This document shows, one piece after another, positions 22,465-48,586 of a stretch of DNA of 64,000 nt. The position numbers were made by a program, and so were the translations under genes. The stretch's first letter is position 1. Each line of letters opens with the position of its first letter. The stretch spans positions 172,017 to 236,016 of the IMG/VR virus record IMGVR_UViG_3300049043_000112, one strand, 5' to 3'. The notes beneath the pieces are model-generated. The model did not search any database. It was not told where the DNA came from and worked only from the letters and a program-made list of their open reading frames with translations.

Positions 22465-22563
22465 GTAGTAAGACCATCAGGGAAATGGTGGAGTTACTAT
22501 GCTCCCCGCACCCTTAGCGGGGATATGAGAGACTGTGTTTAACCTCCCCATAGGTCTCGGTTA
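22465..22563 (-). ncRNA. PhotoRC-II-like structured 5' UTR of psbA
   Basis: GAGAC/GTCTC pairing, CCCCGC-TAAGGGT-GCGGGG hairpin and ACCAT-TTCCCTG-ATGGT hairpin before the ATG; matches my recollection of the cyanophage psbA leader motif. Confidence 0.7.
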
Positions 22564-22613
22564 GGAAGAGGAACTCGTTACAGAAAGTTAACGTTCCGTA
22601 ACATTTGTTTACC

Positions 22614-37896: not shown

Positions 37897-38697
37897 TTAG
37901 TTAAAATAGTTAAGGTAAATAAAGTCTTCTAGGATTTCCATCTCCTTTGCTTTTTCAAGATTTTCTTGAATAGCATTCATTTTCGAATAATAAATTTTTT
38001 CAGAAACTTCAAATTCTTCCGATAAGTCTATTATACCATCTTTATTGAAGAGTTTACCAATATCAGGTGCTCCAAGATAAACTGGTATAGTTCCTGTAGC
38101 AAAACAATCTAAAAGTTTTTCAGTGAAGTAAGTTTCATACTGACCGTTTTCAATTGCAACTGAAAACATATAATCGCAGAGTCCTTCTTCCTTTAAATCA
38201 ATTTCTTTGAATCCACGACCATAAAGATCTACTTGGTCTCCAATTCTTTCAATCCATTCAAGTCTTTTGAGATGCCCCTCACACATTCTTTTGTTTGAAG
38301 AAATCATAGAAATCATTTTTGATTTCTCATAAATTTTTGGTTCTTGAATCCAAAATCCCTGTGCAGGTACCCACTTAAACTTATCACCCAAAGAAAGAAG
38401 TCTTTGGTCGTGAGTGAAAATAATTTCATAAGTATTTTCAACTAACTCACGATTTTCAATAATACTCTCAACAAGACCCTGTTTAATAAATTTTGATTCT
38501 AATAACCAAAGATATTTGGTTCCTGTTCTGGTATCATTGATTCCTTCTGCGATTGTATTATCAATATAGAAGGTGGCATCACCACCCCGCTTTACCCACT
38601 CTATGTACTTTGATACTTTTCCGTGAACAGAATAACCTTTGTTACCACCAGTTAAATGTGTGAAAGTATCTCCAACCAGATTAAACTTTTTTCGCAT
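37897..38697 (-). CDS. GT10 (alpha-1,3-fucosyltransferase)-like protein
   Basis: YMFSVAIEN...YFTEKLLDCF..GTIPVYLG. Confidence 0.85.
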   Translation of the reverse strand: MRKKFNLVGDTFTHLTGGNKGYSVHGKVSKYIEWVKRGGDATFYIDNTIAEGINDTRTGTKYLWLLESKFIKQGLVESIIENRELVENTYEIIFTHDQRLLSLGDKFKWVPAQGFWIQEPKIYEKSKMISMISSNKRMCEGHLKRLEWIERIGDQVDLYGRGFKEIDLKEEGLCDYMFSVAIENGQYETYFTEKLLDCFATGTIPVYLGAPDIGKLFNKDGIIDLSEEFEVSEKIYYSKMNAIQENLEKAKEMEILEDFIYLNYFN

Positions 38698-39736
38698 TGA
38701 TTTGCTCACTAATCCATGCATAAGTCTTGGCAATTCCTTCTTCAAGAGTTTGCGAATAATCCCAACCAAGTTCTCTACGAACTACATCATTATTAGAGTT
38801 ACGTCCACGAACTCCAAGAGGAGCATCAAGTTTATATTGTTTCTGTACTTCTTTACCTGCAACCTTAGCAGCGGTATCCACCAGTTGATTAATGGTTACC
38901 ATTTCTTCTGAACCAATATTTACTGGTCCGATAAACTCAGAATCCATCATACGACGGGTTGCTTCAATACACTCATCAATATAAAGGAATGAACGAGTCT
39001 GTTTTCCATCACCCCAAACTTCTATGGTCCCACCCTCTACGGGCAAATAGGCAACCTTACGGCAGATTGCTGCAGGGGCTTTCTCACGTCCCCCTTGCCA
39101 GGTTCCCTCAGGTCCAAAAATATTGTGATACCGAGCAACCCTAACAGGGATGCCATAATTACGGTGGTAAGCAAAGTATAGACGTTCAGAGAAGAGTTTT
39201 TCCCATCCATATTCAGAATCTGGGTTAGCAGGATAAGCGGATTCTTCACGACAATCAGGATTATCAGGATCTAGTTGATTATGCTCTGGATACATACAGG
39301 CAGAACCAGAATAGAAAATCTTGGTAGTGTTTTTACCATACTGTTCATTCATTTTATGCTGCATCTCAAGAACATTAAGATTGATGGTTGCAGAATTATG
39401 CATAATATCTGCATCATTTTCACCAGTAAAGACAAATCCTGCACCACCCATATCAGCGGCAAACTGATAGATTTCATCAAAGGTTTGAATATAACGATAG
39501 GGAACTGATTGATAGAAGTTACCTCTGTCACCCTTATATTCAAGGACACGACGAACGAAATTTACATCTCGAAGATCTCCAAGAATAAATTCATTTGCTT
39601 CGTGTTGAGAAAATTCTGGATACTTAAGGTCTACACCACGAACCCAATATCCTTCGGATCGTAATCTACGAACCATATGACTTCCAATGAAACCACCAGC
39701 ACCAAGTACAAGTGCTTTCTTAATATACTGACTCAT
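38681..39736 (-). CDS. GDP-mannose 3,5-epimerase-like / WcaG-type NAD-dependent epimerase
   Basis: GAGGFIG, QFAADMGGAGF, YGWEKLFSE and REKAPAA. Confidence 0.88.
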   Translation of the reverse strand: MSQYIKKALVLGAGGFIGSHMVRRLRSEGYWVRGVDLKYPEFSQHEANEFILGDLRDVNFVRRVLEYKGDRGNFYQSVPYRYIQTFDEIYQFAADMGGAGFVFTGENDADIMHNSATINLNVLEMQHKMNEQYGKNTTKIFYSGSACMYPEHNQLDPDNPDCREESAYPANPDSEYGWEKLFSERLYFAYHRNYGIPVRVARYHNIFGPEGTWQGGREKAPAAICRKVAYLPVEGGTIEVWGDGKQTRSFLYIDECIEATRRMMDSEFIGPVNIGSEEMVTINQLVDTAAKVAGKEVQKQYKLDAPLGVRGRNSNNDVVRRELGWDYSQTLEEGIAKTYAWISEQINAKKV

Positions 39737-39808: not shown

Positions 39809-39935
39809 GTTCGCCATGCACGCCACCAATTCTTTAACTGGAAATTGGAAACCAGGCGGGAGAGAGTCCCATCCGCACCACTTGCTTTTAAGGGAAAGCA
39901 AGAAACCAAATAGGGTCATATTTGACTCCACCAGT
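39809..39935 (-). ncRNA. wcaG RNA motif-like structured RNA
   Basis: Several UGGYG elements, CCAAUU/AAUUGG and CUUGC/GCAAG stems, CUGG/CCAG pseudoknot potential; lies upstream of a WcaG-type epimerase. Confidence 0.65.
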
Positions 39936-40665: not shown

Positions 40666-40719
40666 TGTTTTGTTTGTTGACCTAGTTATTATAAGTGGTT
40701 TAGACTTGTGTGTCAAGTG

Positions 40720-40740: not shown

Positions 40741-40816
40741 TCGGAGTACCCGGATTTGAACCGAGATTATTCCTGCTCCCAAAGCAGGTGCCATGACCAA
40801 GTTAGGCGATACTCCG
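40741..40816 (-). tRNA. tRNA-Pro(UGG)
   Basis: Cloverleaf; CCTGC-TT TGG GA-GCAGG. Confidence 0.93.
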
Positions 40817-40819
40817 TTG

Positions 40820-40875
40820 AAGGCAGGTGCGGTATCCCCTTTCGGTTCCCATGCTCCTTTTGCTTTCCTTACCTT
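40820..40875 (-). ncRNA. Unnamed structured RNA candidate, copy 1
   Basis: Near-identical to 47472..47551; starts just after TTGACA-17-TATAAT and ends 3 nt before tRNA-Pro. Confidence 0.65.
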
Positions 40876-40889
40876 ACCTACTAATTATA

Positions 40890-41051
40890 CTACTTCTTGT
40901 GCCCCCTGTCAAACGGCGCCCAGTGTTGCCAGTTGTATTTGTGAATTGCCCAGATACCCATAATAGGCAGAACAATCAGAATGTATCCAAGAAACCCAAG
41001 TGTAACTGGATTTTCCAATATCCAGCGTGAAAAATGTGATAGTTGTTGCAT
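40890..41051 (-). CDS. Small membrane protein (53 aa)
   Basis: Manual translation MQQLSHF...LIVLPIMGIWAIHKYNWQHWAPF; TGATG coupling with the upstream gene. Confidence 0.6.
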   Translation of the reverse strand: MQQLSHFSRWILENPVTLGFLGYILIVLPIMGIWAIHKYNWQHWAPFDRGHKK

Positions 41052-41268
41052 CAATATCCTCTCCAAGTCTTAAACTCATAGTAAAAGTATTGATCCACAT
41101 CACCACTCAAGGGGCATTATCTTCTCTATGTGCCCACACCTCACAAAACTCTACAATACGATAATCGTGTAATGAACTGTGCCCCCACATTCTTACAAAT
41201 GCTGATGCGACAAAATGATACCGCTGTCTAATGTGCGGTTCCGTTGCCTTTGTAATCTTCTGAATCAT
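41051..41268 (-). CDS. Hypothetical protein (frameshift at about 41112)
   Basis: MIQKITKATEPHIRQRYHF...; restoring one C gives ...APLSGDVDQYFYYEFKTWRGY-stop. Confidence 0.6.
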
Positions 41269-41350
41269 AGTATCCTCCTCTTGTACCGAAATATAAGGTT
41301 GTTAATACGAAAGGAACTGAAACAAATAAAAGTGCTTTTGCTAATAACAT
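41228..41350 (-). CDS. ndhP: NDH-1L small subunit NdhP homolog (40 aa)
   Basis: MLLAKALLFVSVPFVLTTLYFGTRGGYYDSEDYKGNGTAH matches the remembered NdhP C-terminus FGTRNGFYDTDQYHGNGSAH. Confidence 0.85.
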   Translation of the reverse strand: MLLAKALLFVSVPFVLTTLYFGTRGGYYDSEDYKGNGTAH

Positions 41351-41355
41351 AAGGT

Positions 41356-41445
41356 TTATTGTGGATAGGCATTGTGAAGTCCCCAATAAACAAAGGACCC
41401 AATAGAACTAAAAAGTAAAAGTGAGGATATAAGTGTTCTAGTCAT
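41356..41445 (-). CDS. NdhQ-like single-TM peptide (29 aa)
   Basis: MTRTLISSLLLFSSIGSFVYWGLHNAYPQ; ungapped match to the remembered NdhQ helix ending W-x-L-H-x-A-Y. Confidence 0.55.
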   Translation of the reverse strand: MTRTLISSLLLFSSIGSFVYWGLHNAYPQ

Positions 41446-41548
41446 TTTCATCCTCATAAGTAGATGGTTCTTCAAATAACTCATTCATCTTTTGTCTTAA
41501 AACTATTTCTTGTAGTTCTTGTAAGTCTTCTTCTGTGATTGTTATCAT
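41438..41548 (-). CDS. Small acidic hypothetical protein (36 aa)
   Basis: MITITEEDLQELQEIVLRQKMNELFEEPSTYEDEND; overlapping start/stop junctions. Confidence 0.55.
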   Translation of the reverse strand: MITITEEDLQELQEIVLRQKMNELFEEPSTYEDEND

Positions 41549-41734
41549 TTGTCCTTAAGTAGGTCTTCTATTCGTTTACGCATATTTGAACTGTCTTGTT
41601 TCATGTAGTCACATGTAGTCACGTAAAGAATAACCACGTTGATTTCTCATAATACAAGTGCCTTGATAAAACATTGTTGCGGCAAATACCAACAACAATG
41701 CAATCCCAATTATTTCAGGGTAATGTTGAGCCAC
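41545..41734 (-). pseudogene. Small membrane protein interrupted by a 10-bp tandem duplication
   Basis: Removing one CATGTAGTCA unit (41602..41621) restores a 59-aa ORF ending KRIEDLLKDK. Confidence 0.55.
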
Positions 41735-41913
41735 GGTAATACTGGTGGAATAACGCCTATTAATCGGAGGAGTCCTTCAGCAAATAAAGCCAGAACCACC
41801 CAACCGACGCACATACTAATGATAGAAGCATTACGGTTGTGTTGTCGTATTGCTGCATCAATCATCTCCTGAACTTCGGAACGGGTAATAAACTCGTCTT
41901 GTGGTTCCATCAC
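41710..41913 (-). CDS. Small membrane protein
   Basis: 67 aa, one to two TM segments. Confidence 0.65.
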   Translation of the reverse strand: MMEPQDEFITRSEVQEMIDAAIRQHNRNASIISMCVGWVVLALFAEGLLRLIGVIPPVLPWLNITLK

Positions 41914-42059
41914 TTTTCATCTCCAAGAAACTTCGCCAAAGGATCTTTGCGGGTTTTAGATATTTCAACTGCTCTCTTATAGAACATATTATCTGTGTTC
42001 CCAGAGGCTTCAAACGTTTCCTTAATCTTCACCCAGTTTTCGTAGGTGTGTTGATCCAT
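41910..42059 (-). CDS. Conserved cyanobacterial/cyanophage hypothetical protein (49 aa)
   Basis: MDQHTYENWVKIKETFEASGNTDNMFYKRA..., manual translation. Confidence 0.65.
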   Translation of the reverse strand: MDQHTYENWVKIKETFEASGNTDNMFYKRAVEISKTRKDPLAKFLGDEK

Positions 42060-42173
42060 AAGGTTTTAGGTTGAATACTACTAATTATATTAATCAGTAT
42101 TTTAAAAACGTCAAGTTTGTGTTGATACACAAATATAGATTAAGACAATCTTAAATTTTGCAATTTATGTAAA

Positions 42174-42260
42174 CGGAAGCGACTGGATTCGAACCAGTGG
42201 AGGTCTTACCCTCATTTGTTTTCAAGACAAACGCAATAAACCGGACTCTGCCACGCTTCC
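42174..42260 (-). tRNA. tRNA-Ser(UGA)
   Basis: Long variable arm; TTTGT-CT TGA AA-ACAAA. Confidence 0.93.
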
Positions 42261-42270
42261 AAATAAGTCC

Positions 42271-42528
42271 TCAACGGACTTCAAAGTCTAAACGTCTAAC
42301 TTTACGCTGACGCCTTGCTTCCTGAAAAGCAAGATCTTCATTCGTAAGAACACCAGACTTTGATTTATTATGATAAGAGTTTAACATAATAATAGAGGAT
42401 AAGTCAACTGCCGAAATCTTATCCCCACGAATAGTCGCCATATTTGGACAACCACACGTCACCATTTTACTTTGATGCCCCTCTAACTCCTTACCACAGG
42501 AGCGGCATCTGATTCTTAAATTTTCCAT
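42271..42528 (-). CDS. Zn-ribbon hypothetical protein
   Basis: CRSC...CGC. Confidence 0.7.
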   Translation of the reverse strand: MENLRIRCRSCGKELEGHQSKMVTCGCPNMATIRGDKISAVDLSSIIMLNSYHNKSKSGVLTNEDLAFQEARRQRKVRRLDFEVR

Positions 42529-42542
42529 TTCTCATTACCAGT

Positions 42543-42986
42543 TTATTCTAATACAGAACGAAGCATCCAATGGAACTTACCATGTGTTTCCATTATAGTT
42601 TGAACAAGATTTGAAGTTGCAAATTGTTTTTGTGCATCTGCTTCTTCAGAAACATCAGCAAATAGTTCAACGATTTTTTTATTATCGTCTCTTAACTGTT
42701 TAACCATCTCTTTTGCATCAATATCTTGTGCGCTATTGGATGCCTGGTCAATGTGTGATACTTCTGTGATTCTTGAAAGAGTACTTACGGGTTTCATATC
42801 CAAGTATCTCATATGTTCAGTCAGAGTATCAATCTCTTCAAACATTGTTTCATACTGCCCACCAAAAAGAGTATGCAGTTGCTGAAAATCAGGACCAACT
42901 ACATCCCAGTGATAAATCCAAGTTTTTTGGAATAGAACAAAAAGTGACGCCTGGGCATCACTCAATAGTTTAAAGAGCTTTTCCAT
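42543..42986 (-). CDS. dps: Dps / ferritin-like DNA-protection protein
   Basis: HWDVVG..F..LH..F..QY......D...E. Confidence 0.9.
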   Translation of the reverse strand: MEKLFKLLSDAQASLFVLFQKTWIYHWDVVGPDFQQLHTLFGGQYETMFEEIDTLTEHMRYLDMKPVSTLSRITEVSHIDQASNSAQDIDAKEMVKQLRDDNKKIVELFADVSEEADAQKQFATSNLVQTIMETHGKFHWMLRSVLE

Positions 42987-43012
42987 TATACCAGTTTTTT
43001 AGGTATTTATAA

Positions 43013-43084
43013 TGGGCAATATCGGATTCGAACCAATGACCGTCTGCGTGTAAAGCAGCTGCGCTACCGCTGCGCCAATCGCCC
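43013..43084 (-). tRNA. tRNA-Val(UAC)
   Basis: Cloverleaf; anticodon loop TT TAC AC. Confidence 0.93.
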
Positions 43085-43091
43085 GTTCAAT

Positions 43092-43256
43092 TTAATGTTT
43101 TTCCATTAAATATTCTACGGTATTTGCTACATCATTCATAGCATCTCGCAAATAAGTTTGTTGTCCAGATTCTTGACGAACAATCGGGCGATGGTCATCG
43201 GTAAGTGTCCACCGCCAAAGGTTCATATCTTTACAATACCAAAGATTAATTTTCAT
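43092..43256 (-). CDS. Conserved cyanophage hypothetical protein (54 aa)
   Basis: MKINLWYCKDMNLWRWTL..., manual translation. Confidence 0.6.
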   Translation of the reverse strand: MKINLWYCKDMNLWRWTLTDDHRPIVRQESGQQTYLRDAMNDVANTVEYLMEKH

Positions 43257-43457
43257 TCTTATACTGCTCCAAACGTACCCAGTTGATAAGTGTATTCAGT
43301 TCATACAACTCTTGTTTGTATGTAGCATATCTGGATAGTTCGGGTCATCAACTAGTTGCGAATCTTCAATAAAAGAAATTTCACTTTTCAGAAAATCAGC
43401 ATAATGCTCAAAGGCAGTAATGGCAAGTTGCCTGTCTAGTTGGGAAAGAAGGGACAT
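43246..43457 (-). CDS. Hypothetical protein (frameshift at about 43330)
   Basis: MSLLSQLDRQLAI...; restoring one A gives ...YELNTLINWVRLEQYKNEN-stop. Confidence 0.55.
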
Positions 43458-43478
43458 AAAACCTTTAACTCGTTACCT

Positions 43479-43512
43479 AGTATAGACTAAAAAGGGGGTT
43501 GTGTCAACCCCC
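43479..43512 (-). promoter_or_regulatory. pstS terminator overlapping a sigma70-type promoter
   Basis: GGGG-TTGACACAA-CCCCC-TTTTT; TTGACA-17-TATACT. Confidence 0.7.
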
Positions 43513-43518
43513 TGTATA

Positions 43519-44497
43519 TCAATTCTCTCCTAGACCAACTTGCTTGACCTTCAGGCGGGCACGGTTCAGAACTGAACCAGCAAGAGGAACATAACCCAGG
43601 TCATCAGCGATAGACTGCGCTTTGCCACTCAGAGCATAGTTCAGAGCATCACGGACTGCCTGTGCCTTACCAGGAGCATAACCACTCTTATAGGCAATAA
43701 TCCAGGTCAGAGTGGAGATAGGATATGCCTGAAGCACCTGCGGGGTTAGGGTCTTCACCAGCAAGAGTTACGGGATCCAGTTTGATTCCGTTCAGAGCAG
43801 CGGCACCAGTCACGGCAGAAGGTCCAACGAACTTACCTGCCTTGTTCTGAATAACTGCTGCTTGGAGTTTGTTGGCACGGACAAATCCAGTGTTCACATA
43901 ACCAATACCACCAACAGTGTTCTTAATGGTTCCAGCAACACCTTCATTGCCCTTAGAACCAACACCAGTAGGCCAGTTGATAGACTTACCTACACCAGGA
44001 GCCCAACCACCAAAAGCATCCAGAGAGTTGGTGAAGGCAAAGGTGGTTCCAGAACCATCAGAACGATGAACAACCATCATCTTACCAGCAGCACAACCAA
44101 CTTGCTTGTAATCGTTAATGCGACCAGAGAAAATATCAACAACTTGTTTCTGCGTCAGTTTCAGTTTGCAACCAGGCTTGTTATAAGCAATCGCAATCGT
44201 TCCACCGACCATAGGAATCTGAACGACACCACGCTTTACCTTTGCCGCTTCCTTTGCCTTGATAGGTTCATCAGAAGCACCGAAGTCAACGGTTCCAGCA
44301 ACGAACTGACGGATACCAGCACCAGAACCAACGGACTGATAGTTTACACGGTCACCAGAAGACACAGAGTAGTCTTGGAACCAGCGTTGGTAGATAGGTG
44401 CGGGGAAGGTGGCACCAGCACCATTAATGACAGGTCCAGCAAGTGCGGTAGTGGGAGCAAGGGCAAGACCGATTGTAGCAATGTGTTTAAGTTTCAT
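43519..44497 (-). CDS. pstS: Phosphate-binding protein PstS (frameshift at about 43733)
   Basis: GAGATFPAP, YQSVGSGAG, DFGASD, RSDGSGTT and AYPISTLTW; the two ORFs join by removing one T. Confidence 0.95.
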
Positions 44498-44522
44498 AAA
44501 AATTAAAAACTTCGTAGTAATT

Positions 44523-44552
44523 TTACTTGATTTAGATTAAGAGAAGGTTAAA
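44523..44552 (-). promoter_or_regulatory. Pho box upstream of pstS
   Basis: TTTAACCT-tct-CTTAATCT-aaa-(TCAAGTAA): 11-bp period, matching the cyanobacterial YTTAAYYW consensus. Confidence 0.75.
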
Positions 44553-44566
44553 TATGTCCAAACACC

Positions 44567-44591
44567 AAAAAACCTCCCCGAAAGGAGGTTT
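44567..44591 (-). terminator. Intrinsic terminator after the porin gene
   Basis: AAACCTCC-TTTCG-GGGAGGTTTTTT. Confidence 0.8.
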
Positions 44592-44610
44592 AGAGGTATC
44601 TAAGATATTA

Positions 44611-46098
44611 TCAGAAACGGAAGGTAGTCTGAATCACACCACCATAGTTAGAAGAAGCATTCTTCAGACCTTGGTTGTTGGACACATAGAACACCGCAGG
44701 GGTGATGCTGATGTTATCGCTAACCTTGTAACGATAGAAGGTTTCCCACATAATAGCATCCTTACACAGAGTCTCTGCGTTACCAGGAGCACCGATGGCA
44801 AAACCAGCAGCATTACCCTTAGCAAAAACATCGCTCCACTGAACACCGGCCATCCAAGTCTGCGAATTGGTAGCAGCATTAGGAGTTGCGGGACCACTTA
44901 CATAGTTCCAACCGTAAGCAGCACTCACAGAAGGAATGATACCAGAGGTCTTAGGCTGCCAGTAAGCATTCAGAGCATAACCGTTAGAGGTTTGGTTAGC
45001 AGCAAGAGTACCAGCATTACCAGCAACACCGTTAAAGGTGCGAATACGGGTTCCTTCAGTACCATTACGATAACCGAAAGCAATGCCATACTGAGGAGCA
45101 CGATAACCAAATTGTGCCAGAGTATTCAGAGCACCAGAGGCATCAAATTCACCTTTGGTTGAATCGTTACCATTCTGAGCAACATAGTTGATACCAGCAA
45201 CGAATCCACCCTTACCTTTCTTGGTAGGTTGTGACCATTGAGCACCGAAACCAGCACCAGTTGCCTTGTTATAGACACCAGGAGCACCAGCAACTTGGAA
45301 GAAGTCAAGAATATCCGACTTATATGCAGAAGGAATCCAAGCGATTTCAGTGTTACGAACCTGAGCACCGGCGGTAAGCATTACACCCTTTGCAAGTCCA
45401 GGGAAGGTGTAATACAAACGATCCAGAGTCATCGTGTTCGCATAGGTTTCTGCCTTGTCCAGTTTGAACAGGGAAGAAGAGGAACCGAATGGTTGACTGG
45501 AGAAGTTACCAGAACGCAAACGGGTCTTGAGCAAATCCTTACCTGTGAAGGAAGTATCAAAACTCAGGCGGAGGTCATAGTTGAAAGCGGTATTTCCGAC
45601 ATTGCTGCTGTTAGCAAGACGAGCACCGTCTACACCACCAAGAACGAAAGTTGCTTCACCCTTAAGTTTGGTAGTCGTGGAGAACTGTTGTGCTTGAAGA
45701 GTACCAACTTGAGTTTCAAGTTTAGCAACACGACCTTTGATGACTGCAAGTTCCTTAGCAAACTCATTCGCAAGACGATTGAGTTCATCGGTAACTTCAG
45801 TCACGCGATCTAGACAAGCATTCAGAAGTGCAGCTGCTTCAAAACGGGTCATTGCCTGACCACCACGGAAGGTTCCGTTTTCATAACCAGCAACACAACC
45901 ATAACGCTCAACAAGATTGCTGAGTGCCTGATAAGCCCAGTCAGTGGGTTTTACATCAGACAGTTGGTTGATGCTCGTGACTTGTTCCGTGCTGGCATAT
46001 TGGTTGACTGCTGCCATATTAAGATCTGCGGCATTCGCAGCAACAGGAGCAACCATTCCCAGAGCAACAGGTGCAAGCATCAGTTGTTTGAGTTTCAT
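44611..46098 (-). CDS. Cyanobacterial Som/OprB-type outer-membrane porin with SLH domain
   Basis: Signal peptide, SDVKPTDWAYQALSNLVERYGC SLH motif, FSTTTKLKGE, C-terminal TTFRF. Confidence 0.92.
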   Translation of the reverse strand: MKLKQLMLAPVALGMVAPVAANAADLNMAAVNQYASTEQVTSINQLSDVKPTDWAYQALSNLVERYGCVAGYENGTFRGGQAMTRFEAAALLNACLDRVTEVTDELNRLANEFAKELAVIKGRVAKLETQVGTLQAQQFSTTTKLKGEATFVLGGVDGARLANSSNVGNTAFNYDLRLSFDTSFTGKDLLKTRLRSGNFSSQPFGSSSSLFKLDKAETYANTMTLDRLYYTFPGLAKGVMLTAGAQVRNTEIAWIPSAYKSDILDFFQVAGAPGVYNKATGAGFGAQWSQPTKKGKGGFVAGINYVAQNGNDSTKGEFDASGALNTLAQFGYRAPQYGIAFGYRNGTEGTRIRTFNGVAGNAGTLAANQTSNGYALNAYWQPKTSGIIPSVSAAYGWNYVSGPATPNAATNSQTWMAGVQWSDVFAKGNAAGFAIGAPGNAETLCKDAIMWETFYRYKVSDNISITPAVFYVSNNQGLKNASSNYGGVIQTTFRF

Positions 46099-46153
46099 AA
46101 AAAGTTTTTTGTATGTACTAAACGACAAATAAAGGGTTTTAAAGAAAACCGCA

Positions 46154-46248
46154 ATATTTAGAGCGACTTAACCAATTCTTAAAAGAATATTAAGTCAACG
46201 GTATCATAGCATAACCGTATCTGTTGTGTCAATTAAGACTAGGTTAAG
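46154..46248 (-). promoter_or_regulatory. Porin promoter with Pho-box-like arrays
   Basis: CTTAACCT/CTTAATTG pair at the -35 (TTGACA-18-TATGAT) and four more 11-bp-period repeats at 46154..46194. Confidence 0.65.
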
Positions 46249-46249
46249 A

Positions 46250-46321
46250 AGCGGAGTATCGGATTCGAACCGACGACATCTAACTTGGAAGGATAGCGTT
46301 CTACCACTGAACTAACTCCGC
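46250..46321 (-). tRNA. tRNA-Gly(UCC)
   Basis: Cloverleaf; loop CT TCC AA. Confidence 0.93.
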
Positions 46322-46323
46322 AA

Positions 46324-46396
46324 TGGTGGGGATTTACCCGACCTCAGGTTTCCCTTCATAGGCACGGAACCCCACGCACTTCACTTCACACGGACA
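46324..46396 (-). ncRNA. Kink-turn-containing hairpin RNA candidate ending in CCA
   Basis: GUGGGG/CCCCAC stem enclosing CC-UAU-GA-AGG-GAAA-CCU-GA-GG; follows TTGACA-18-TATACT. Confidence 0.55.
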
Positions 46397-46432
46397 TATG
46401 AAGTATAAGACATAATCGAGTATTATGTCAAG

Positions 46433-46503
46433 AGCCCCGACAAGATTCGAACTTGCGACCAGCGGTTTACAAAACCGCTGCTCTACCACTGAGCTACAGA
46501 GGC
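46433..46503 (-). tRNA. tRNA-Thr(UGU)
   Basis: GCGGT-TT TGT AA-ACCGC; acceptor 3' strand one G short (probable homopolymer error). Confidence 0.9.
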
Positions 46504-46593
46504 GAAACAGGGAGGCCATCCCCCTGACCTAAAAATATTCTAGGTTTTAGTTGGAAGGAGTGCTCTTGAAGGTTATCGCAGGATCACTTCCAA

Positions 46594-46667
46594 CTCCCCC
46601 ACCTGGACTCGAACCAGGAACCCCAGAGTTAACAGCTCCGTGCTCTGCCAATTAAGACTATAAGGGA
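46594..46667 (-). tRNA. tRNA-Asn(GUU)
   Basis: CGGAG-CT GTT AA-CTCTG. Confidence 0.92.
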
Positions 46668-46669
46668 AT

Positions 46670-46812
46670 GATGGTAGGAGGGATTTCTATGTGCAGACAG
46701 AATCACCTTTCACATCATCCAGTCTAAACCAGCGAGAGGTGTTGCACTTCCTACATTTGATGGATTAAGTGTGATATACCTCAGAGAGTATAACAGGGAC
46801 TTAACCTCCAAC
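46670..46812 (-). ncRNA. Multi-stem structured RNA, manA-motif-like
   Basis: GUAGGA/UCCUAC, GUGCA/UGCAC, CACCU/AGGUG and UUAAGU/ACUUAA stems; begins after TTGACA-17-TACTAT and abuts tRNA-Asn. Confidence 0.55.
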
Positions 46813-46849
46813 AATTTATATAGTAACAAACTTTTGTAAGTTTGTCAAG

Positions 46850-46923
46850 CGTCCTCTGAGAGATTCGAACTCCCGACACATAGGTTCGTAACCTACTGCT
46901 CTGTTCCGCTGAGCTAAAAGGAC
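46850..46923 (-). tRNA. tRNA-Arg(ACG)
   Basis: GTAGG-TT ACG AA-CCTAT. Confidence 0.92.
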
Positions 46924-46927
46924 AAGG

Positions 46928-46999
46928 CGAAGGGCAAGAGACTTGAACTCTGAACTTTGGTTTTGGAGACCAAGATGTTACCAATTACACCAACCCGAC
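46928..46999 (-). tRNA. tRNA-Trp(CCA)
   Basis: TTGGT-CT CCA AA-ACCAA; two acceptor-stem mismatches. Confidence 0.85.
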
Positions 47000-47000
47000 A

Positions 47001-47075
47001 TGGTTCTGAGAGTAGGATTCGAACCCACGAATGGCGGGACCAAAACCCGCTGCCTTACCGCTTGGCGACCTCAGA
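47001..47075 (-). tRNA. tRNA-Gln(UUG)
   Basis: GCGGG-TT TTG GT-CCCGC; encoded CCA. Confidence 0.92.
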
Positions 47076-47076
47076 G

Positions 47077-47150
47077 TGGGGTGACGTATGGGAATTGAAC
47101 CCATCTAGGTGGTTCCACAAACCACTGCCTTACCACTAGGCTAACGTCAC
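47077..47150 (-). tRNA. tRNA-His(GUG)
   Basis: GTGGT-TT GTG GA-ACCAC; C73 and encoded CCA. Confidence 0.92.
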
Positions 47151-47151
47151 A

Positions 47152-47225
47152 TAGCAGTAGGTAGATTTGAACTACCGACCATAGGCGTATGAAACCCGTG
47201 CTCTGCCAGACTGAGCTATACTGCT
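47152..47225 (-). tRNA. tRNA with CAU anticodon (elongator Met or Ile2)
   Basis: Loop TT CAT AC; weak anticodon stem. Confidence 0.8.
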
Positions 47226-47229
47226 AAGG

Positions 47230-47312
47230 CGGAAGATGTTGGGATCGAACCAACGGAGGTGTTACCCTCACGGTTTAGCAAACCGCTGCATTAACCACTC
47301 TGCCAATCTTCC
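47230..47312 (-). tRNA. tRNA-Ser(GCU)
   Basis: Long variable arm; loop TT GCT AA. Confidence 0.93.
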
Positions 47313-47315
47313 AAA

Positions 47316-47388
47316 TGGAAACAACTGGACTTGAACCAGTGGTCTTTCGATTATCAGTCGAATGCTTTACCAACTAAGCTATGTTTCC
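47316..47388 (-). tRNA. tRNA-Ile(GAU)
   Basis: TTCGA-CT GAT AA-TCGAA. Confidence 0.93.
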
Positions 47389-47391
47389 AAA

Positions 47392-47463
47392 TAGTCTCAA
47401 CGGGACTTGAACCCGTGTCTACACTGTGAAAGAGTGTTGTCCTAACCACTAGACGATAAGACC
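47392..47463 (-). tRNA. tRNA-Glu(UUC)
   Basis: ACACT-CT TTC AC-AGTGT. Confidence 0.93.
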
Positions 47464-47471
47464 ATAAGATG

Positions 47472-47551
47472 AAGGCAGGTGCGGTATCTCCTCCCAATAG
47501 TACAAAACTAATATTGGAAGGTTCCCATGCTCCTTTTACTTTCCTTACCTT
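47472..47551 (-). ncRNA. Unnamed structured RNA candidate, copy 2 (expanded hairpin)
   Basis: Same 32-nt and 20-nt flanks as 40820..40875; GAAA loop replaced by a 28-nt insert extending the stem; between tRNA-Asp and tRNA-Glu. Confidence 0.65.
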
Positions 47552-47554
47552 CAA

Positions 47555-47628
47555 CGACCCATACGGGATTTGAACCCGTGATCTCCACCGTGACAGGGTG
47601 GCGTGATAGACCGCTACACTAATGGGTC
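47555..47628 (-). tRNA. tRNA-Asp(GUC)
   Basis: CCACC-CT GTC AC-GGTGG. Confidence 0.93.
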
Positions 47629-47632
47629 AAGG

Positions 47633-47790: not shown

Positions 47791-47909
47791 ACATAATATG
47801 GATAAATATTCGGTTGTCTAGGTTCTGGTCTCTCGACCACTTGATTAGAATACCACCGTTTGGTCTCTGGGGAGGGACTGGTGGACACTTAGGAAACCGT
47901 CACAGGCAA

Positions 47910-48127: not shown

Positions 48128-48586
48128 TCAAGTCCAAAGATTATGGTCATATTCCCAATGGCAGTTTGGACATAACGGCATTATATTTTCTTTTGAGTTT
48201 ATAATGCTAATCATAACATCTTCACTAAAAGAAGAAATAGGTTTTATATGTGCAACTTCGATATGTTTATCGTATCCGCATCTAACACATTCAATAAAAC
48301 CAAGTTTTTTAGCAACTACTCTTGCGCGAGTTCTTACTAAAGCAAAGGCGGAAGACTTATGATGTTTTTCGTAAATTGCTTCTTTAAGTGTCATATCACC
48401 TAAAAACCCAGAACAGTTTATACATCTTTTGCTTCTATAATCAATTTCTTTATCACATAATTCACAATTATTTGGAAAATTAATTTTTTTTCTTTTTGGG
48501 TGATGAGTATTAGTCCATTTAGCAGAGCAACTTCTACTACAAAATTTAGGATTATTATGTTGTTTTCCGCAGGTTACACATTCCAT
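48128..48586 (-). mobile_element. HNH endonuclease with Zn-binding N-terminus, inserted in the tRNA array
   Basis: C..CGY...IEVAHIKP.......N...LCPNCHWE; late promoter at 48610..48617. Confidence 0.85.

What the first reader, a model, noticed from the sequence alone, without database searches (positions are those of the whole stretch)
40820..47551. Unnamed structured RNA present twice in the tRNA region, with a swap-in variable hairpin
Seen: copy 1 (56 nt) is AAGGUAAGGAAAGCAAAAGGAGCAUGGGAACC-GAAA-GGGGAUACCGCACCUGCCUU. Copy 2 (80 nt) differs at one base in each flank, but GAAA is replaced by a 28-nt insert that extends the same CC/GG stem to 10 bp (CCUUCCAAUA/UAUUGGGAGG). Terminal AAGGU/GCCUU, AGG/CCU and GGAGC/GCACC pairings, an A-rich bulge and a GAA/(G,A)GAUA loop-E-like internal loop are kept. 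Copy 1 starts at the predicted +1 of a consensus promoter and ends 3 nt before tRNA-Pro; copy 2 fills the gap between tRNA-Asp and tRNA-Glu, so tRNA processing would release it. The ATG inside gives unrelated peptides in the two copies, so it is not coding. Inferred: a phage small RNA class matured with the tRNAs, for example a protein sponge or a decoy for host anti-phage RNases. I cannot match it to a family I know.
Basis: partly seen in the sequence, partly recalled or inferred. Interest (0 to 1): 0.8.

Follow-up and report, generated by a model that had tools for sequence, protein, structure and literature searches.

The report
New small RNA in phage tRNA arrays
The two look-alike stretches are real copies of a previously undescribed, strongly conserved small structured RNA that sits inside the tRNA gene clusters of many large phages. 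Its function is still unknown.

Summary
The window (a freshwater T4-like cyanophage) holds exactly two copies on the tRNA strand: 40820-40875 and 47470-47553. They have identical cores and a 4-nt versus 32-nt hairpin cap.

The element belongs to a large family. Three cultured phages also carry it, unannotated: Vibrio 1.121.O, Cobetia Carin-5 and Ralstonia RSP15.

No Rfam 15 family matches, and no paper in the held library describes it. Among one genome for each of 185,579 bacterial and archaeal species there were 2 hits, both on metagenome-bin contigs. The one examined is a misbinned phage.

Covariation supports this fold:
- a terminal helix P1 of 7-8 bp;
- an invariant 12-nt purine strand;
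- helix P2, N-GGAG-N over N'-CACC-N', with a fixed A.A mismatch;
- an AU bulge, a GG/CC step and a G/GAUA loop;
- a hairpin P3 of free length.

Larger relatives carry two extra hairpins with palindromic loops. Members lie in tRNA arrays, always on the tRNA strand, usually 0-9 nt from a neighbouring tRNA, and often directly after tRNA-Asp.

The most likely reading is a stable, trans-acting RNA cut out by tRNA-processing enzymes. Its target is unknown. A ribozyme or an aptamer is not excluded.

The parts
40820..40875 (-). Copy 1, minimal form (56 nt). P1 pairs 40871-40875 with 40820-40824 (5 bp). Purine strand J1/2 is 40859-40870. P2 pairs 40853-40858 with 40825-40830. AU bulge is 40851-40852. 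GG/CC pairs 40849-40850 with 40831-40832. P3 is CC-GAAA-GG, 40838-40845.
   Evidence: 76.0 bits; pair model
47470..47553 (-). Copy 2, long-hairpin form (84 nt). P1 pairs 47547-47553 with 47470-47476 (7 bp). J1/2 is 47535-47546. P2 pairs 47529-47534 with 47477-47482. AU bulge is 47527-47528. GG/CC pairs 47525-47526 with 47483-47484. P3 is a 10-bp stem, 47512-47521 with 47490-47499, and a 12-nt loop, 47500-47511.
   Evidence: 77.4 bits. The minimum-free-energy fold equals the covariation model, z = -2.3.
40884..40912 (-). Consensus sigma-70-type promoter (TTGACA, 17 nt, TATAAT) driving copy 1 plus tRNA-Pro.
   Evidence: 12 of 12 matches
40741..40816 (-). tRNA-Pro(UGG), 3 nt downstream of copy 1. 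RNase P cleavage at its 5' end would set the 3' end of copy 1 (inferred).
47554..47629 (-). tRNA-Asp(GUC), which ends exactly where P1 of copy 2 begins.
   Evidence: The Asp adjacency recurs in 24 of 58 members that have an upstream tRNA.
47391..47464 (-). tRNA-Glu(UUC), 5 nt downstream of P1 of copy 2.
47793..47820 (-). Promoter-like site in front of tRNA-Lys. It is the likely start of the array Lys-Tyr-Asp-[copy 2]-Glu-Ile-Ser-Met-His-Gln-Trp-Arg.
   Evidence: 10 of 12 matches

Best explanation
The element is a gene for a small, highly structured, stable non-coding RNA. It is 55-85 nt in this phage and up to about 140 nt in relatives, and it rides in phage tRNA operons.

Shown here:
- It is a family of at least 166 distinct members, found in phage sequence only.
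- It always lies on the tRNA strand.
- Its fold is proven by covariation. A terminal helix P1 of 7-8 bp stacks, with no linker on the 3' strand, on helix P2 (N-GGAG-N over N'-CACC-N', with an invariant A.A mismatch). A near-invariant 12-nt purine strand (AAGGAAAG-N-AAA) bridges P1 and P2 on the 5' side. An AU bulge, a GG/CC step and a G/GAUA internal loop follow. The cap is a hairpin of free length.

Inferred:
- It is transcribed with the tRNAs, or from its own consensus promoter as for copy 1.
- It is cut out by the enzymes that mature its neighbours. 3'-end processing of the upstream tRNA, or the transcription start, sets its 5' end. RNase P cleavage at the next tRNA sets its 3' end.
- P1 then protects both ends, as an acceptor stem does.
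- The released RNA acts in trans. Its invariant, asymmetric core forms a specific surface for a partner that is the same in very different hosts, most plausibly a component of the tRNA or translation machinery. The hairpin and the optional extra arms only stabilise or multimerise the core.

Confidence by step:
- About 0.9 that it is a real structured RNA family linked to tRNA operons.
- About 0.6 that it is released as a discrete stable RNA.
- About 0.35-0.4 that it works by binding a conserved macromolecule.
For: Family and fold:
- One search left one partner base free: A-U 77, G-C 21, U-G 1, and only one true member unpaired.
-, for the base before GGAG against the base after CACC: A-U 54, C-G 42, U-A 2, C.C 2.
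- 93.7% of cells paired against 36-53% slid; 241 cells with double changes against 82.5 expected from shuffles.
- P1 positions 3-6 are paired in 83-97% of members against about 45% when shuffled, and pairing falls to chance at position 8.
- The U.G pair at the inner end of P1 (82 of 100) fits only the tRNA-sense strand.

Context:
- 133 of 166 members have a same-strand tRNA within 1 kb, and none has an opposite-strand tRNA. 55 have a tRNA no more than 15 nt upstream and 46 no more than 15 nt downstream.
- Copy 1 has a perfect promoter.
- In Cobetia phage Carin-5 the RNA is followed by an intrinsic terminator and has no annotated tRNA in the 3-kb stretch. This argues for a stand-alone product.

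Host range:
- Hosts of carriers span cyanobacteria (this window), Enterovibrio, Cobetia and Ralstonia.
- Only 2 hits occur among the genomes of 185,579 species, both on metagenome-bin contigs. The 132-kb one carries phage genes.

Folding: the minimal form folds no better than shuffles (z = +0.57). It therefore needs tertiary contacts or a partner.

RNA libraries: a metatranscriptome contig covers exactly 40820-40875, with unlike flanks.
Against: - No direct evidence of a discrete transcript. The runs served were assembled contigs without ends, and RNA libraries can contain DNA. No RNA run was listed for copy 2 itself.
- No partner was identified. No protein family recurs within 3 kb in more than 15 of 166 loci.
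- Promoter-proximal members are few (7 of 161).
- Terminator-like sites downstream are no more frequent than at random positions (8 of 165 against 39 of 830). The stand-alone arrangement is therefore the exception.
- About 35 near-invariant bases in a 50-nt core is more typical of ribozymes and aptamers than of protein-binding RNAs.
Confidence: 0.5

Rival explanations
1. A new class of small self-cleaving or self-processing ribozyme. It would cut at or near its own P1 boundary and so help to dice tRNA-array transcripts independently of host RNases.
For: - The conservation pattern is ribozyme-like: a core of about 50 nt with about 35 near-invariant bases, an invariant A.A mismatch and AU bulge, and freely variable peripheral stems and optional arms.
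- Conservation does not depend on the host.
- P1 begins 0-4 nt after the upstream tRNA.
- Nearest-neighbour stability of the minimal form is weak, which implies a tertiary fold.
Against: - No match to any known ribozyme class in Rfam.
- Some members start at a promoter, or stand alone with a terminator, where cleavage would serve nothing obvious.
- A cut that leaves a 2',3'-cyclic phosphate on a tRNA 3' end would hinder aminoacylation (general knowledge).
- No cleavage data exist.
Confidence: 0.12
2. A ligand-binding aptamer made at tRNA-like levels. It would sense or soak up a small molecule, for example a nucleotide signal or a metabolite common to all hosts.
For: - Same conservation argument as for the ribozyme.
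- The invariant purine strand next to a helix with a fixed mismatch could form a pocket.
- It is absent from cellular genomes, which suggests a phage-specific need.
Against: - There is no expression platform. Copy 1 is 3 nt from tRNA-Pro and copy 2 lies between two tRNAs, so it is not a conventional riboswitch.
- No riboswitch family matches.
- There is no gene association that would point to a ligand.
Confidence: 0.1
3. A cis-acting element of tRNA operons. It could be a structured spacer that guides or insulates processing of the flanking tRNAs, or a put-like RNA that makes RNA polymerase resistant to termination across the untranslated array.
For: - It is strictly co-oriented with tRNAs and embedded in arrays.
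- Copy 1 lies at the very start of a transcription unit.
- The tRNA-Asp/tRNA-Glu slot of the related phage S-PM2 holds an unrelated double hairpin of similar length. This suggests the slot tolerates or needs structure.
Against: - A mere spacer would not keep about 35 bases fixed across phages of different phyla.
- Position in the array varies: first, middle, last, or more than 1 kb from any tRNA in 33 of 166 members.
- In Carin-5 a terminator follows directly, which fits neither antitermination nor tRNA processing.
Confidence: 0.15
4. A decayed tRNA gene, a mobile-element remnant, a DNA-level site or a tiny protein-coding gene.
For: - The large forms have a four-arm, cloverleaf-like topology with no linker between the last arm and the 3' strand of P1.
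- Distribution among close relatives is patchy. The closest cultured relative, S-SRM01, showed no BLAST match to either copy. S-PM2, read directly, has no copy in the tRNA-Asp/tRNA-Glu slot.
Against: - ARAGORN and the Rfam tRNA model do not call it, and it has no T-loop consensus.
- The interior is conserved and the terminal helix varies, the reverse of a transposon with inverted repeats.
- G.U pairs fit only one strand.
- The internal ATG gives 16 and 6 unrelated codons.
Confidence: 0.03

Closest known systems
Phage T4 small stable RNAs rnaC and rnaD (species 1 and 2 RNAs)
   Same: They are encoded inside a phage tRNA cluster on the tRNA strand, directly after a tRNA. The record annotates them as small stable RNAs. 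From general knowledge, their function is still unknown.
   Different: They are unrelated in sequence and fold. The covariance model finds nothing in the T4 tRNA region with filters off (best 9.4 bits, E 0.31). T4 rnaC contains a tRNA-like T arm, which this RNA lacks. The T4 RNAs are 119-139 nt and, as far as I know, restricted to T4-like coliphages. This family spans phages of several bacterial phyla.
GOLLD and ROOL RNAs
   Same: They are phage and prophage non-coding RNAs of unknown function, often found near tRNA islands. They form homo-oligomers (PMC12286853). The large forms of this family carry palindromic apical loops that could mediate self-association.
   Different: GOLLD and ROOL are 500-800 nt or longer and are Rfam families, and neither matches here. 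This RNA is 55-140 nt. Its minimal form lacks the palindromic loops. Oligomerisation is only inferred.
sRNAs derived from tRNA-precursor spacers in E. coli (3'ETS-leuZ and the metZWV spacer, which act as sponges for sRNAs; from my own knowledge, not checked here)
   Same: They are functional RNAs excised from tRNA operon transcripts by the tRNA-processing RNases, and they act in trans.
   Different: Those act through a short base-pairing region with Hfq and are poorly structured. This RNA has a rigid, covariation-supported fold, and its single-stranded purine strand is not kept as a free seed for any target I could identify.
tRNA (acceptor/T-arm coaxial stack)
   Same: The terminal helix is 7-8 bp and closes both ends. 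It abuts the next helix with no linker on the 3' strand. The large forms are four-way junctions. Maturation is presumably by the same enzymes.
   Different: There is no T loop, D loop or anticodon arm. Neither ARAGORN nor RF00005 recognises it. A 12-nt purine strand replaces the D and anticodon arms in the minimal form.
Phage HK022 put RNA (from my own knowledge)
   Same: It is a small structured phage RNA near a promoter that acts on the transcribing polymerase. Copy 1 sits at the start of its transcript.
   Different: Most members are in mid-array or after a tRNA, not next to a promoter (7 of 161). One is followed directly by a terminator. No sequence relation was tested, because put is not among the Rfam hits.

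Membership tests
Any Rfam 15 family (4227 models, including all riboswitch and self-cleaving ribozyme classes, GOLLD, ROOL, 6S, SRP, tmRNA, RNase P) | Covariance-model score at or above the family's gathering threshold | tested here: not met
   No hit at either copy at gathering thresholds. There was no meaningful hit at E up to 10 on 10 kb or on each copy alone. The best were a snoRNA model at 14 bits against a threshold of 70, and a Tymo tRNA-like hit at 21 bits that is carried by tRNA-Asp. The large forms also gave none.
tRNA | Cloverleaf with T loop and anticodon arm, recognised by ARAGORN and RF00005 | tested here: not met
   The 18 tRNAs called all lie outside the two copies.
T4 species 1/2 RNAs (rnaC, rnaD) | Sequence and structure similarity to the T4 genes | tested here: not met
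   Model R1 with filters off on T4 69000-75000 gave a best score of 9.4 bits, and that hit is not at rnaC or rnaD.
T4 species 1/2 RNAs (as a kind: stable RNA encoded in a phage tRNA cluster) | Encoded in the tRNA cluster on the tRNA strand | tested here: met
   (690 same-strand tRNAs against 0 opposite-strand within 1 kb).
T4 species 1/2 RNAs (as a kind) | Accumulates as a discrete stable RNA released by tRNA-processing enzymes | not testable with these tools
   Only assembled contigs of metatranscriptomes were available. One covers exactly the motif, but it gives no ends and does not prove transcription.
Mimic of the 16S rRNA 3' end or Shine-Dalgarno decoy | Conserved complementarity or similarity to the 16S 3' terminal region | tested here: not met
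   The model found no significant match on the E. coli rrnH operon (best 9 bits, E 0.4, on the antisense strand). The A before GGAG changes to C or U together with its pairing partner in 44 of 100 members. The Shine-Dalgarno-like stretch is therefore structural and not kept as such.
Protein-coding small ORF | Open frame conserved between copies | tested here: not met
   16 codons in copy 1 against 6 in copy 2, and the peptides differ after 3 residues.
Kissing-loop self-associating RNAs | Self-complementary apical loops kept despite sequence change | tested here: inconclusive
   In the large forms, loops carry palindromes of 6 nt or more in 17 of 42 cases, against about 10% in shuffles. The motifs differ between members: GAUC, UGAUCA, UAAUUA, GGCC, GUGCAC. 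This does not apply to the two window copies, and no physical test was possible.

The most novel reading that the evidence does not exclude
The RNA is a new class of functional core, either catalytic or ligand- or tRNA-binding, that large virulent phages of many bacterial phyla make at tRNA-like levels. Three versions fit the data:
- a new small self-cleaving ribozyme that dices tRNA arrays;
- an RNA 'sponge' for a universal small molecule or signalling nucleotide;
- an RNA that grips particular tRNAs.

For the third version, the core shows GAU-A and GAA-A, which are Asp and Glu codons followed by a purine as in T-box specifier loops. Copy 2 lies between tRNA-Asp and tRNA-Glu, and tRNA-Asp is the upstream neighbour in 41% of the members that have one.
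Probability: 0.2. Interest if true: 0.92.

Novelty: categorically new. Interest (0 to 1): 0.78.

Why it matters
Phage tRNA arrays are now studied as counter-measures to host shut-off and to tRNA-targeting defences. Their non-tRNA passengers are almost unexplored. T4's species 1 and 2 RNAs have had no function for fifty years, and GOLLD and ROOL only recently gained structures.

This is a third, much smaller and much more widespread passenger. Its core of about 50 nt is kept almost base for base in phages of cyanobacteria and proteobacteria, and it is absent from cells. That points to an interaction with something universal, or to chemistry done by the RNA itself.

Its small size makes it easy to study by probing, crystallography or NMR, pull-down and deletion. 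Three cultured phages that carry it make the question directly testable. At the least it deserves an Rfam family, so that phage genomes stop leaving it unannotated.

Tried and rejected
1. Known RNA families. Four Rfam searches at two thresholds found nothing on the window copies, and two more found nothing on the large forms.
2. Literature. Full-text searches for core sequence strings and for topic terms found no description. A 2026 preprint mapping prokaryotic non-coding space does not cover phages.
3. RNase P RNA resemblance. The string AGGAAAGUC plus AUAGGCA occurs in some large forms. I rejected the link because the second type of large form lacks it, Rfam RNase P models give no hit even at E 10, and the stretch pairs locally as a hairpin.
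4. 16S 3'-end, anti-Shine-Dalgarno or A-site mimicry. Rejected.
5. Kink-turn reading of the G/GAUA loop. The bulge is on the wrong side of the tandem G.A position, so I did not adopt it. A loop-E or S-turn remains possible for members with A at the second loop position, but not for those with C.
6. Homology to T4 rnaC and rnaD. None found.
7. A conserved partner gene. All-against-all BLAST of 1,792 ORFs within 3 kb of members gave no family in more than 15 loci. The window neighbours are ordinary cyanophage genes: porin, PstS, ferritin, HNH.
8. Transcript evidence. RNA runs hold only short parts. One contig spans exactly the motif in another context. No RNA run was listed for copy 2.
9. Plasmids and cells. 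No plasmid match. The 2 genome hits are metagenome-bin contigs, and the one examined is a phage contig.
10. Stand-alone gene architecture as the rule. Not supported. Downstream terminators are at background frequency, and Carin-5 is an exception.
11. Large forms in cultured phages. None found by BLAST.

Full report
**What is in the window**

The window is a freshwater T4-like cyanophage.
- It carries wcaG and PhotoRC-II RNAs.
- It has 18 tRNA genes on the minus strand between 40741 and 48715.
- Its closest cultured relative is Synechococcus phage S-SRM01.
- Lake and freshwater metagenomes hold the stretch.

- Copy 1 is 40820-40875.
- Copy 2 is 47472-47551, or 47470-47553 with its full terminal helix.
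- The flanks differ at one base each.
- A GAAA cap in copy 1 is replaced in copy 2 by a 28-nt insert that lengthens the same stem to 10 bp.
- Chance expectation for the shared core is zero.
- Copy 1 follows a perfect TTGACA-17-TATAAT promoter at 40912-40884 and ends 3 nt before tRNA-Pro.
- Copy 2 fills the gap between tRNA-Asp and tRNA-Glu in a tightly packed array.
- The internal ATG opens 16 codons in copy 1 and 6 in copy 2, with unrelated peptides.

**It is one of a large family**

An exact 16-mer from the 5' core found 49 viral contigs. About 38 of them carry the whole element with a different hairpin.

After removing duplicates I had 166 distinct instances. Lengths run from 51 to about 190 nt, with a median of 68. 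There are three grades:
- minimal forms, with a GNRA-capped 2-3-bp hairpin, like copy 1;
- forms with a longer hairpin, like copy 2;
- forms of about 115-140 nt, in which two extra hairpins are inserted at the single variable base of the purine strand.

Three cultured phages carry divergent members that are not annotated in GenBank:
- Vibrio phage 1.121.O;
- Cobetia phage Carin-5;
- Ralstonia phage RSP15.

A model built from other phages' copies finds exactly two sites in the window, at 77 and 76 bits.

**It is not a known family**

Rfam 15 gives no hit at gathering thresholds. It gives nothing meaningful at E up to 10, whether on 10 kb, on each copy alone, or on a large form. Full-text searches for core strings and for topic terms found no description. 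The T4 small stable RNAs rnaC and rnaD occupy the analogous place in T4 and are unrelated.

**It belongs to phages only**

A specific pattern found 2 loci among one genome for each of 185,579 bacterial and archaeal species. Both are on contigs of metagenome bins. The 132-kb one encodes a phage DNA polymerase, an endolysin, Hsp20 and an HNH endonuclease. Plasmids gave nothing.

**The fold**

- *First model-free test.* I scanned for members in which the base after GGAG is not C and left its presumed partner free. The partner was U with A in 77 cases and C with G in 21. It was G with U once, and only one true member was unpaired.
- *Second model-free test.* In the same loci, the base before GGAG and the base after CACC, neither fixed by the pattern, are A-U 54, C-G 42, U-A 2 and C.C 2.
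- *Terminal helix.* Anchored on the invariant cores, positions 3-6 are paired in 83-97% of 100 members, against about 45% after shuffling. Pairing fades to chance at position 8, so P1 is 7-8 bp.
- *Model-based count.* On the alignment fitted to the model, 93.7% of cells pair against 36-53% when the partner is slid. Nine of 16 pairs show changes on both sides.
- *Strand.* The inner U.G pair of P1 fits only the tRNA-sense strand.

The resulting model, 5' to 3', is:
- P1;
- a purine strand, AAGGAAAG-N-AAA, conserved at 83-100% per position among the divergent members aligned in A2, although no search pattern used for those loci fixed it;
- P2, made of N-GGAG-N with N'-CACC-N' and an A.A mismatch that never varies;
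- an AU bulge;
- a GG/CC step;
- an internal loop of G plus 1-3 bases opposite 0-3 bases plus GAUA;
- the variable hairpin P3;
- the 3' strand of P2 runs directly into that of P1.

AGG/CCU and GGAGC/GCACC cannot both form, and covariation selects the second, extended by the A-U pair.

Thermodynamic folding reproduces the model for copy 2, for Carin-5 and for a large form. It does not for the 56-nt copy 1, which folds no better than shuffles. The minimal RNA must therefore rely on tertiary contacts or on a partner.

A few members keep P1, the purine strand and P2 but have a different distal arm. One of them lies 1.2 kb from a canonical copy in the same phage. The P1/purine-strand/P2 module therefore looks like the essential part.

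**Context**

- Within 1 kb of the 166 members there are 690 tRNAs on the same strand and none on the other.
- Fifty-five members have a tRNA no more than 15 nt upstream and 46 have one no more than 15 nt downstream.
- Allowing for the outer part of P1, the RNA starts 0-4 nt after the preceding tRNA and ends about 3-9 nt before the next.
- The upstream tRNA is tRNA-Asp in 24 of 58 cases, although Asp is only 3.9% of the tRNAs in these loci. The Asp genes concerned belong to at least three very different lineages.
- Seven of 161 members follow a promoter-like site at the right distance.
- Terminator-like sites downstream are at background frequency.
- In Carin-5 the RNA has no annotated tRNA in the 3-kb stretch fetched and is followed by a clear intrinsic terminator.
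- No protein family recurs near the RNA.
- In S-PM2 the same Asp/Glu slot holds an unrelated double hairpin.
- BLAST found neither copy in S-SRM01. Presence is therefore patchy even among cyanomyoviruses.

**What it most likely does**

Shown: it is a phage-specific, tRNA-operon-linked RNA with a defined fold and an unusually invariant core.

Inferred:
- It is released by the tRNA-processing enzymes, or starts at its own promoter.
- It is protected by P1.
- It acts in trans through the surface made by the purine strand, the mismatched P2, the AU bulge and the GAUA loop.

The same core is kept in phages of cyanobacteria, of a beta-proteobacterium and of two gamma-proteobacteria. The partner should therefore be common to all of them, and the tRNA or translation apparatus is the obvious candidate.

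I give about 0.9 to 'real structured RNA family of tRNA operons'. I give about 0.6 to 'discrete stable RNA' and about 0.35-0.4 to 'binds a conserved macromolecule'.

The conservation pattern is equally what one sees in small ribozymes and aptamers. Those rivals, together about 0.2, cannot be excluded without bench work. A purely cis role in processing or antitermination (0.15) fits the strict co-orientation. It fits poorly with the variable position in arrays and with the Carin-5 gene.

**Relatives' extras**

In the large forms the apical loops of the inserted hairpins are palindromic. The sequences differ from member to member: GAUC, UGAUCA, UAAUUA, GGCC, GUGCAC, CUGCAG. Palindromes of 6 nt or more occur in 17 of 42 cases, against about 10% in shuffles.

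Different palindromes in the two loops of one molecule suggest pairing between molecules. This recalls GOLLD and ROOL, the large phage RNAs of tRNA islands that form homo-oligomeric cages (PMC12286853). It is an inference, and it does not apply to the two window copies.

**Transcript evidence is thin**

Four metatranscriptome runs were available only as assembled contigs. In one, a 275-nt contig matches exactly 40820-40875 with unlike flanks, which is a relative's copy in an RNA library. Another run shows breaks at 40842 and 40876. This is compatible with expression but does not prove it. No RNA run was listed for copy 2.

**Verdict**

The interpretation as an unnamed structured phage RNA class tied to tRNA maturation is supported, and the proposed function is untested. 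As far as Rfam 15 and the searchable literature go, this is a new RNA family. It is compact, abundant in environmental phages and experimentally approachable.

Noticed in passing
window 39812-39910 (-) and 38681-39736 (-): A full-length wcaG RNA (RF01761, 100 bits) lies directly upstream of an ORF with NAD-dependent epimerase and GDP-mannose 4,6-dehydratase domains. This is the classic association of that cyanophage motif.
   Followed up: partly
window 22489-22580 (-): PhotoRC-II RNA (RF01717, 71.6 bits), another cyanophage motif. It helps to identify the window as a cyanomyovirus.
   Followed up: no
window 42543-46128 and 48128-48586 (-): Host-like genes are interspersed with the tRNAs: a ferritin/Dps-like protein, a PstS-like phosphate-binding protein and an OprB/SLH porin. 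An HNH endonuclease lies between two tRNA groups.
   Followed up: partly
window 40688-40716 and 40884-40912 (-): Two perfect TTGACA-17-TATAAT promoters bracket a very short unit made only of copy 1 plus tRNA-Pro.
   Followed up: partly
L335:1774-1829 (Synechococcus phage S-PM2, LN828717 109381-109436): The same tRNA-Asp/tRNA-Glu slot in S-PM2 holds an unrelated 56-nt spacer that folds into two hairpins. The slot seems to host different structured inserts in different cyanomyoviruses.
   Followed up: partly
L223:2695-2786 (-) and L223:3936-4013 (-); also L295, L318, L333, L306, L028: One phage has a canonical copy and, 1.2 kb away, a second copy with the same P1, purine strand and P2 but a different distal arm. 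A few other contigs show further distal-arm variants.
   Followed up: partly
Related loci, e.g. L083, L086, L088, L093, L103, L115, L131, L182, L189: Forms of about 115-140 nt have two extra hairpins whose apical loops are palindromic (GAUC, UGAUCA, UAAUUA, GGCC, GUGCAC, CUGCAG). This suggests kissing-loop self-association.
   Followed up: partly
Related loci, and window 47554-47629: tRNA-Asp is the immediate upstream neighbour in 24 of 58 members that have an upstream tRNA. This holds across at least three divergent tRNA-Asp lineages, although Asp is only 3.9% of the tRNAs in these loci. Shared ancestry is not excluded.
   Followed up: partly
L088:12914-13298 and L103:8103-8446: Two phage contigs that carry large forms also encode two-piece (alpha-type, permuted) tmRNA genes in the same tRNA-rich region.
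   Followed up: no
L148 (CAIWHI010000271.1, 132-kb contig of a 'Bacteroidetes' MAG): The contig carries a phage DNA polymerase, an endolysin, Hsp20, an HNH endonuclease and tRNAs. It looks like a phage genome binned into a bacterial MAG.
   Followed up: partly
L144:1578-2534 (Vibrio phage 1.121.O): About 960 nt after the RNA carry no annotated feature. I did not examine them for further non-coding RNAs.
   Followed up: no
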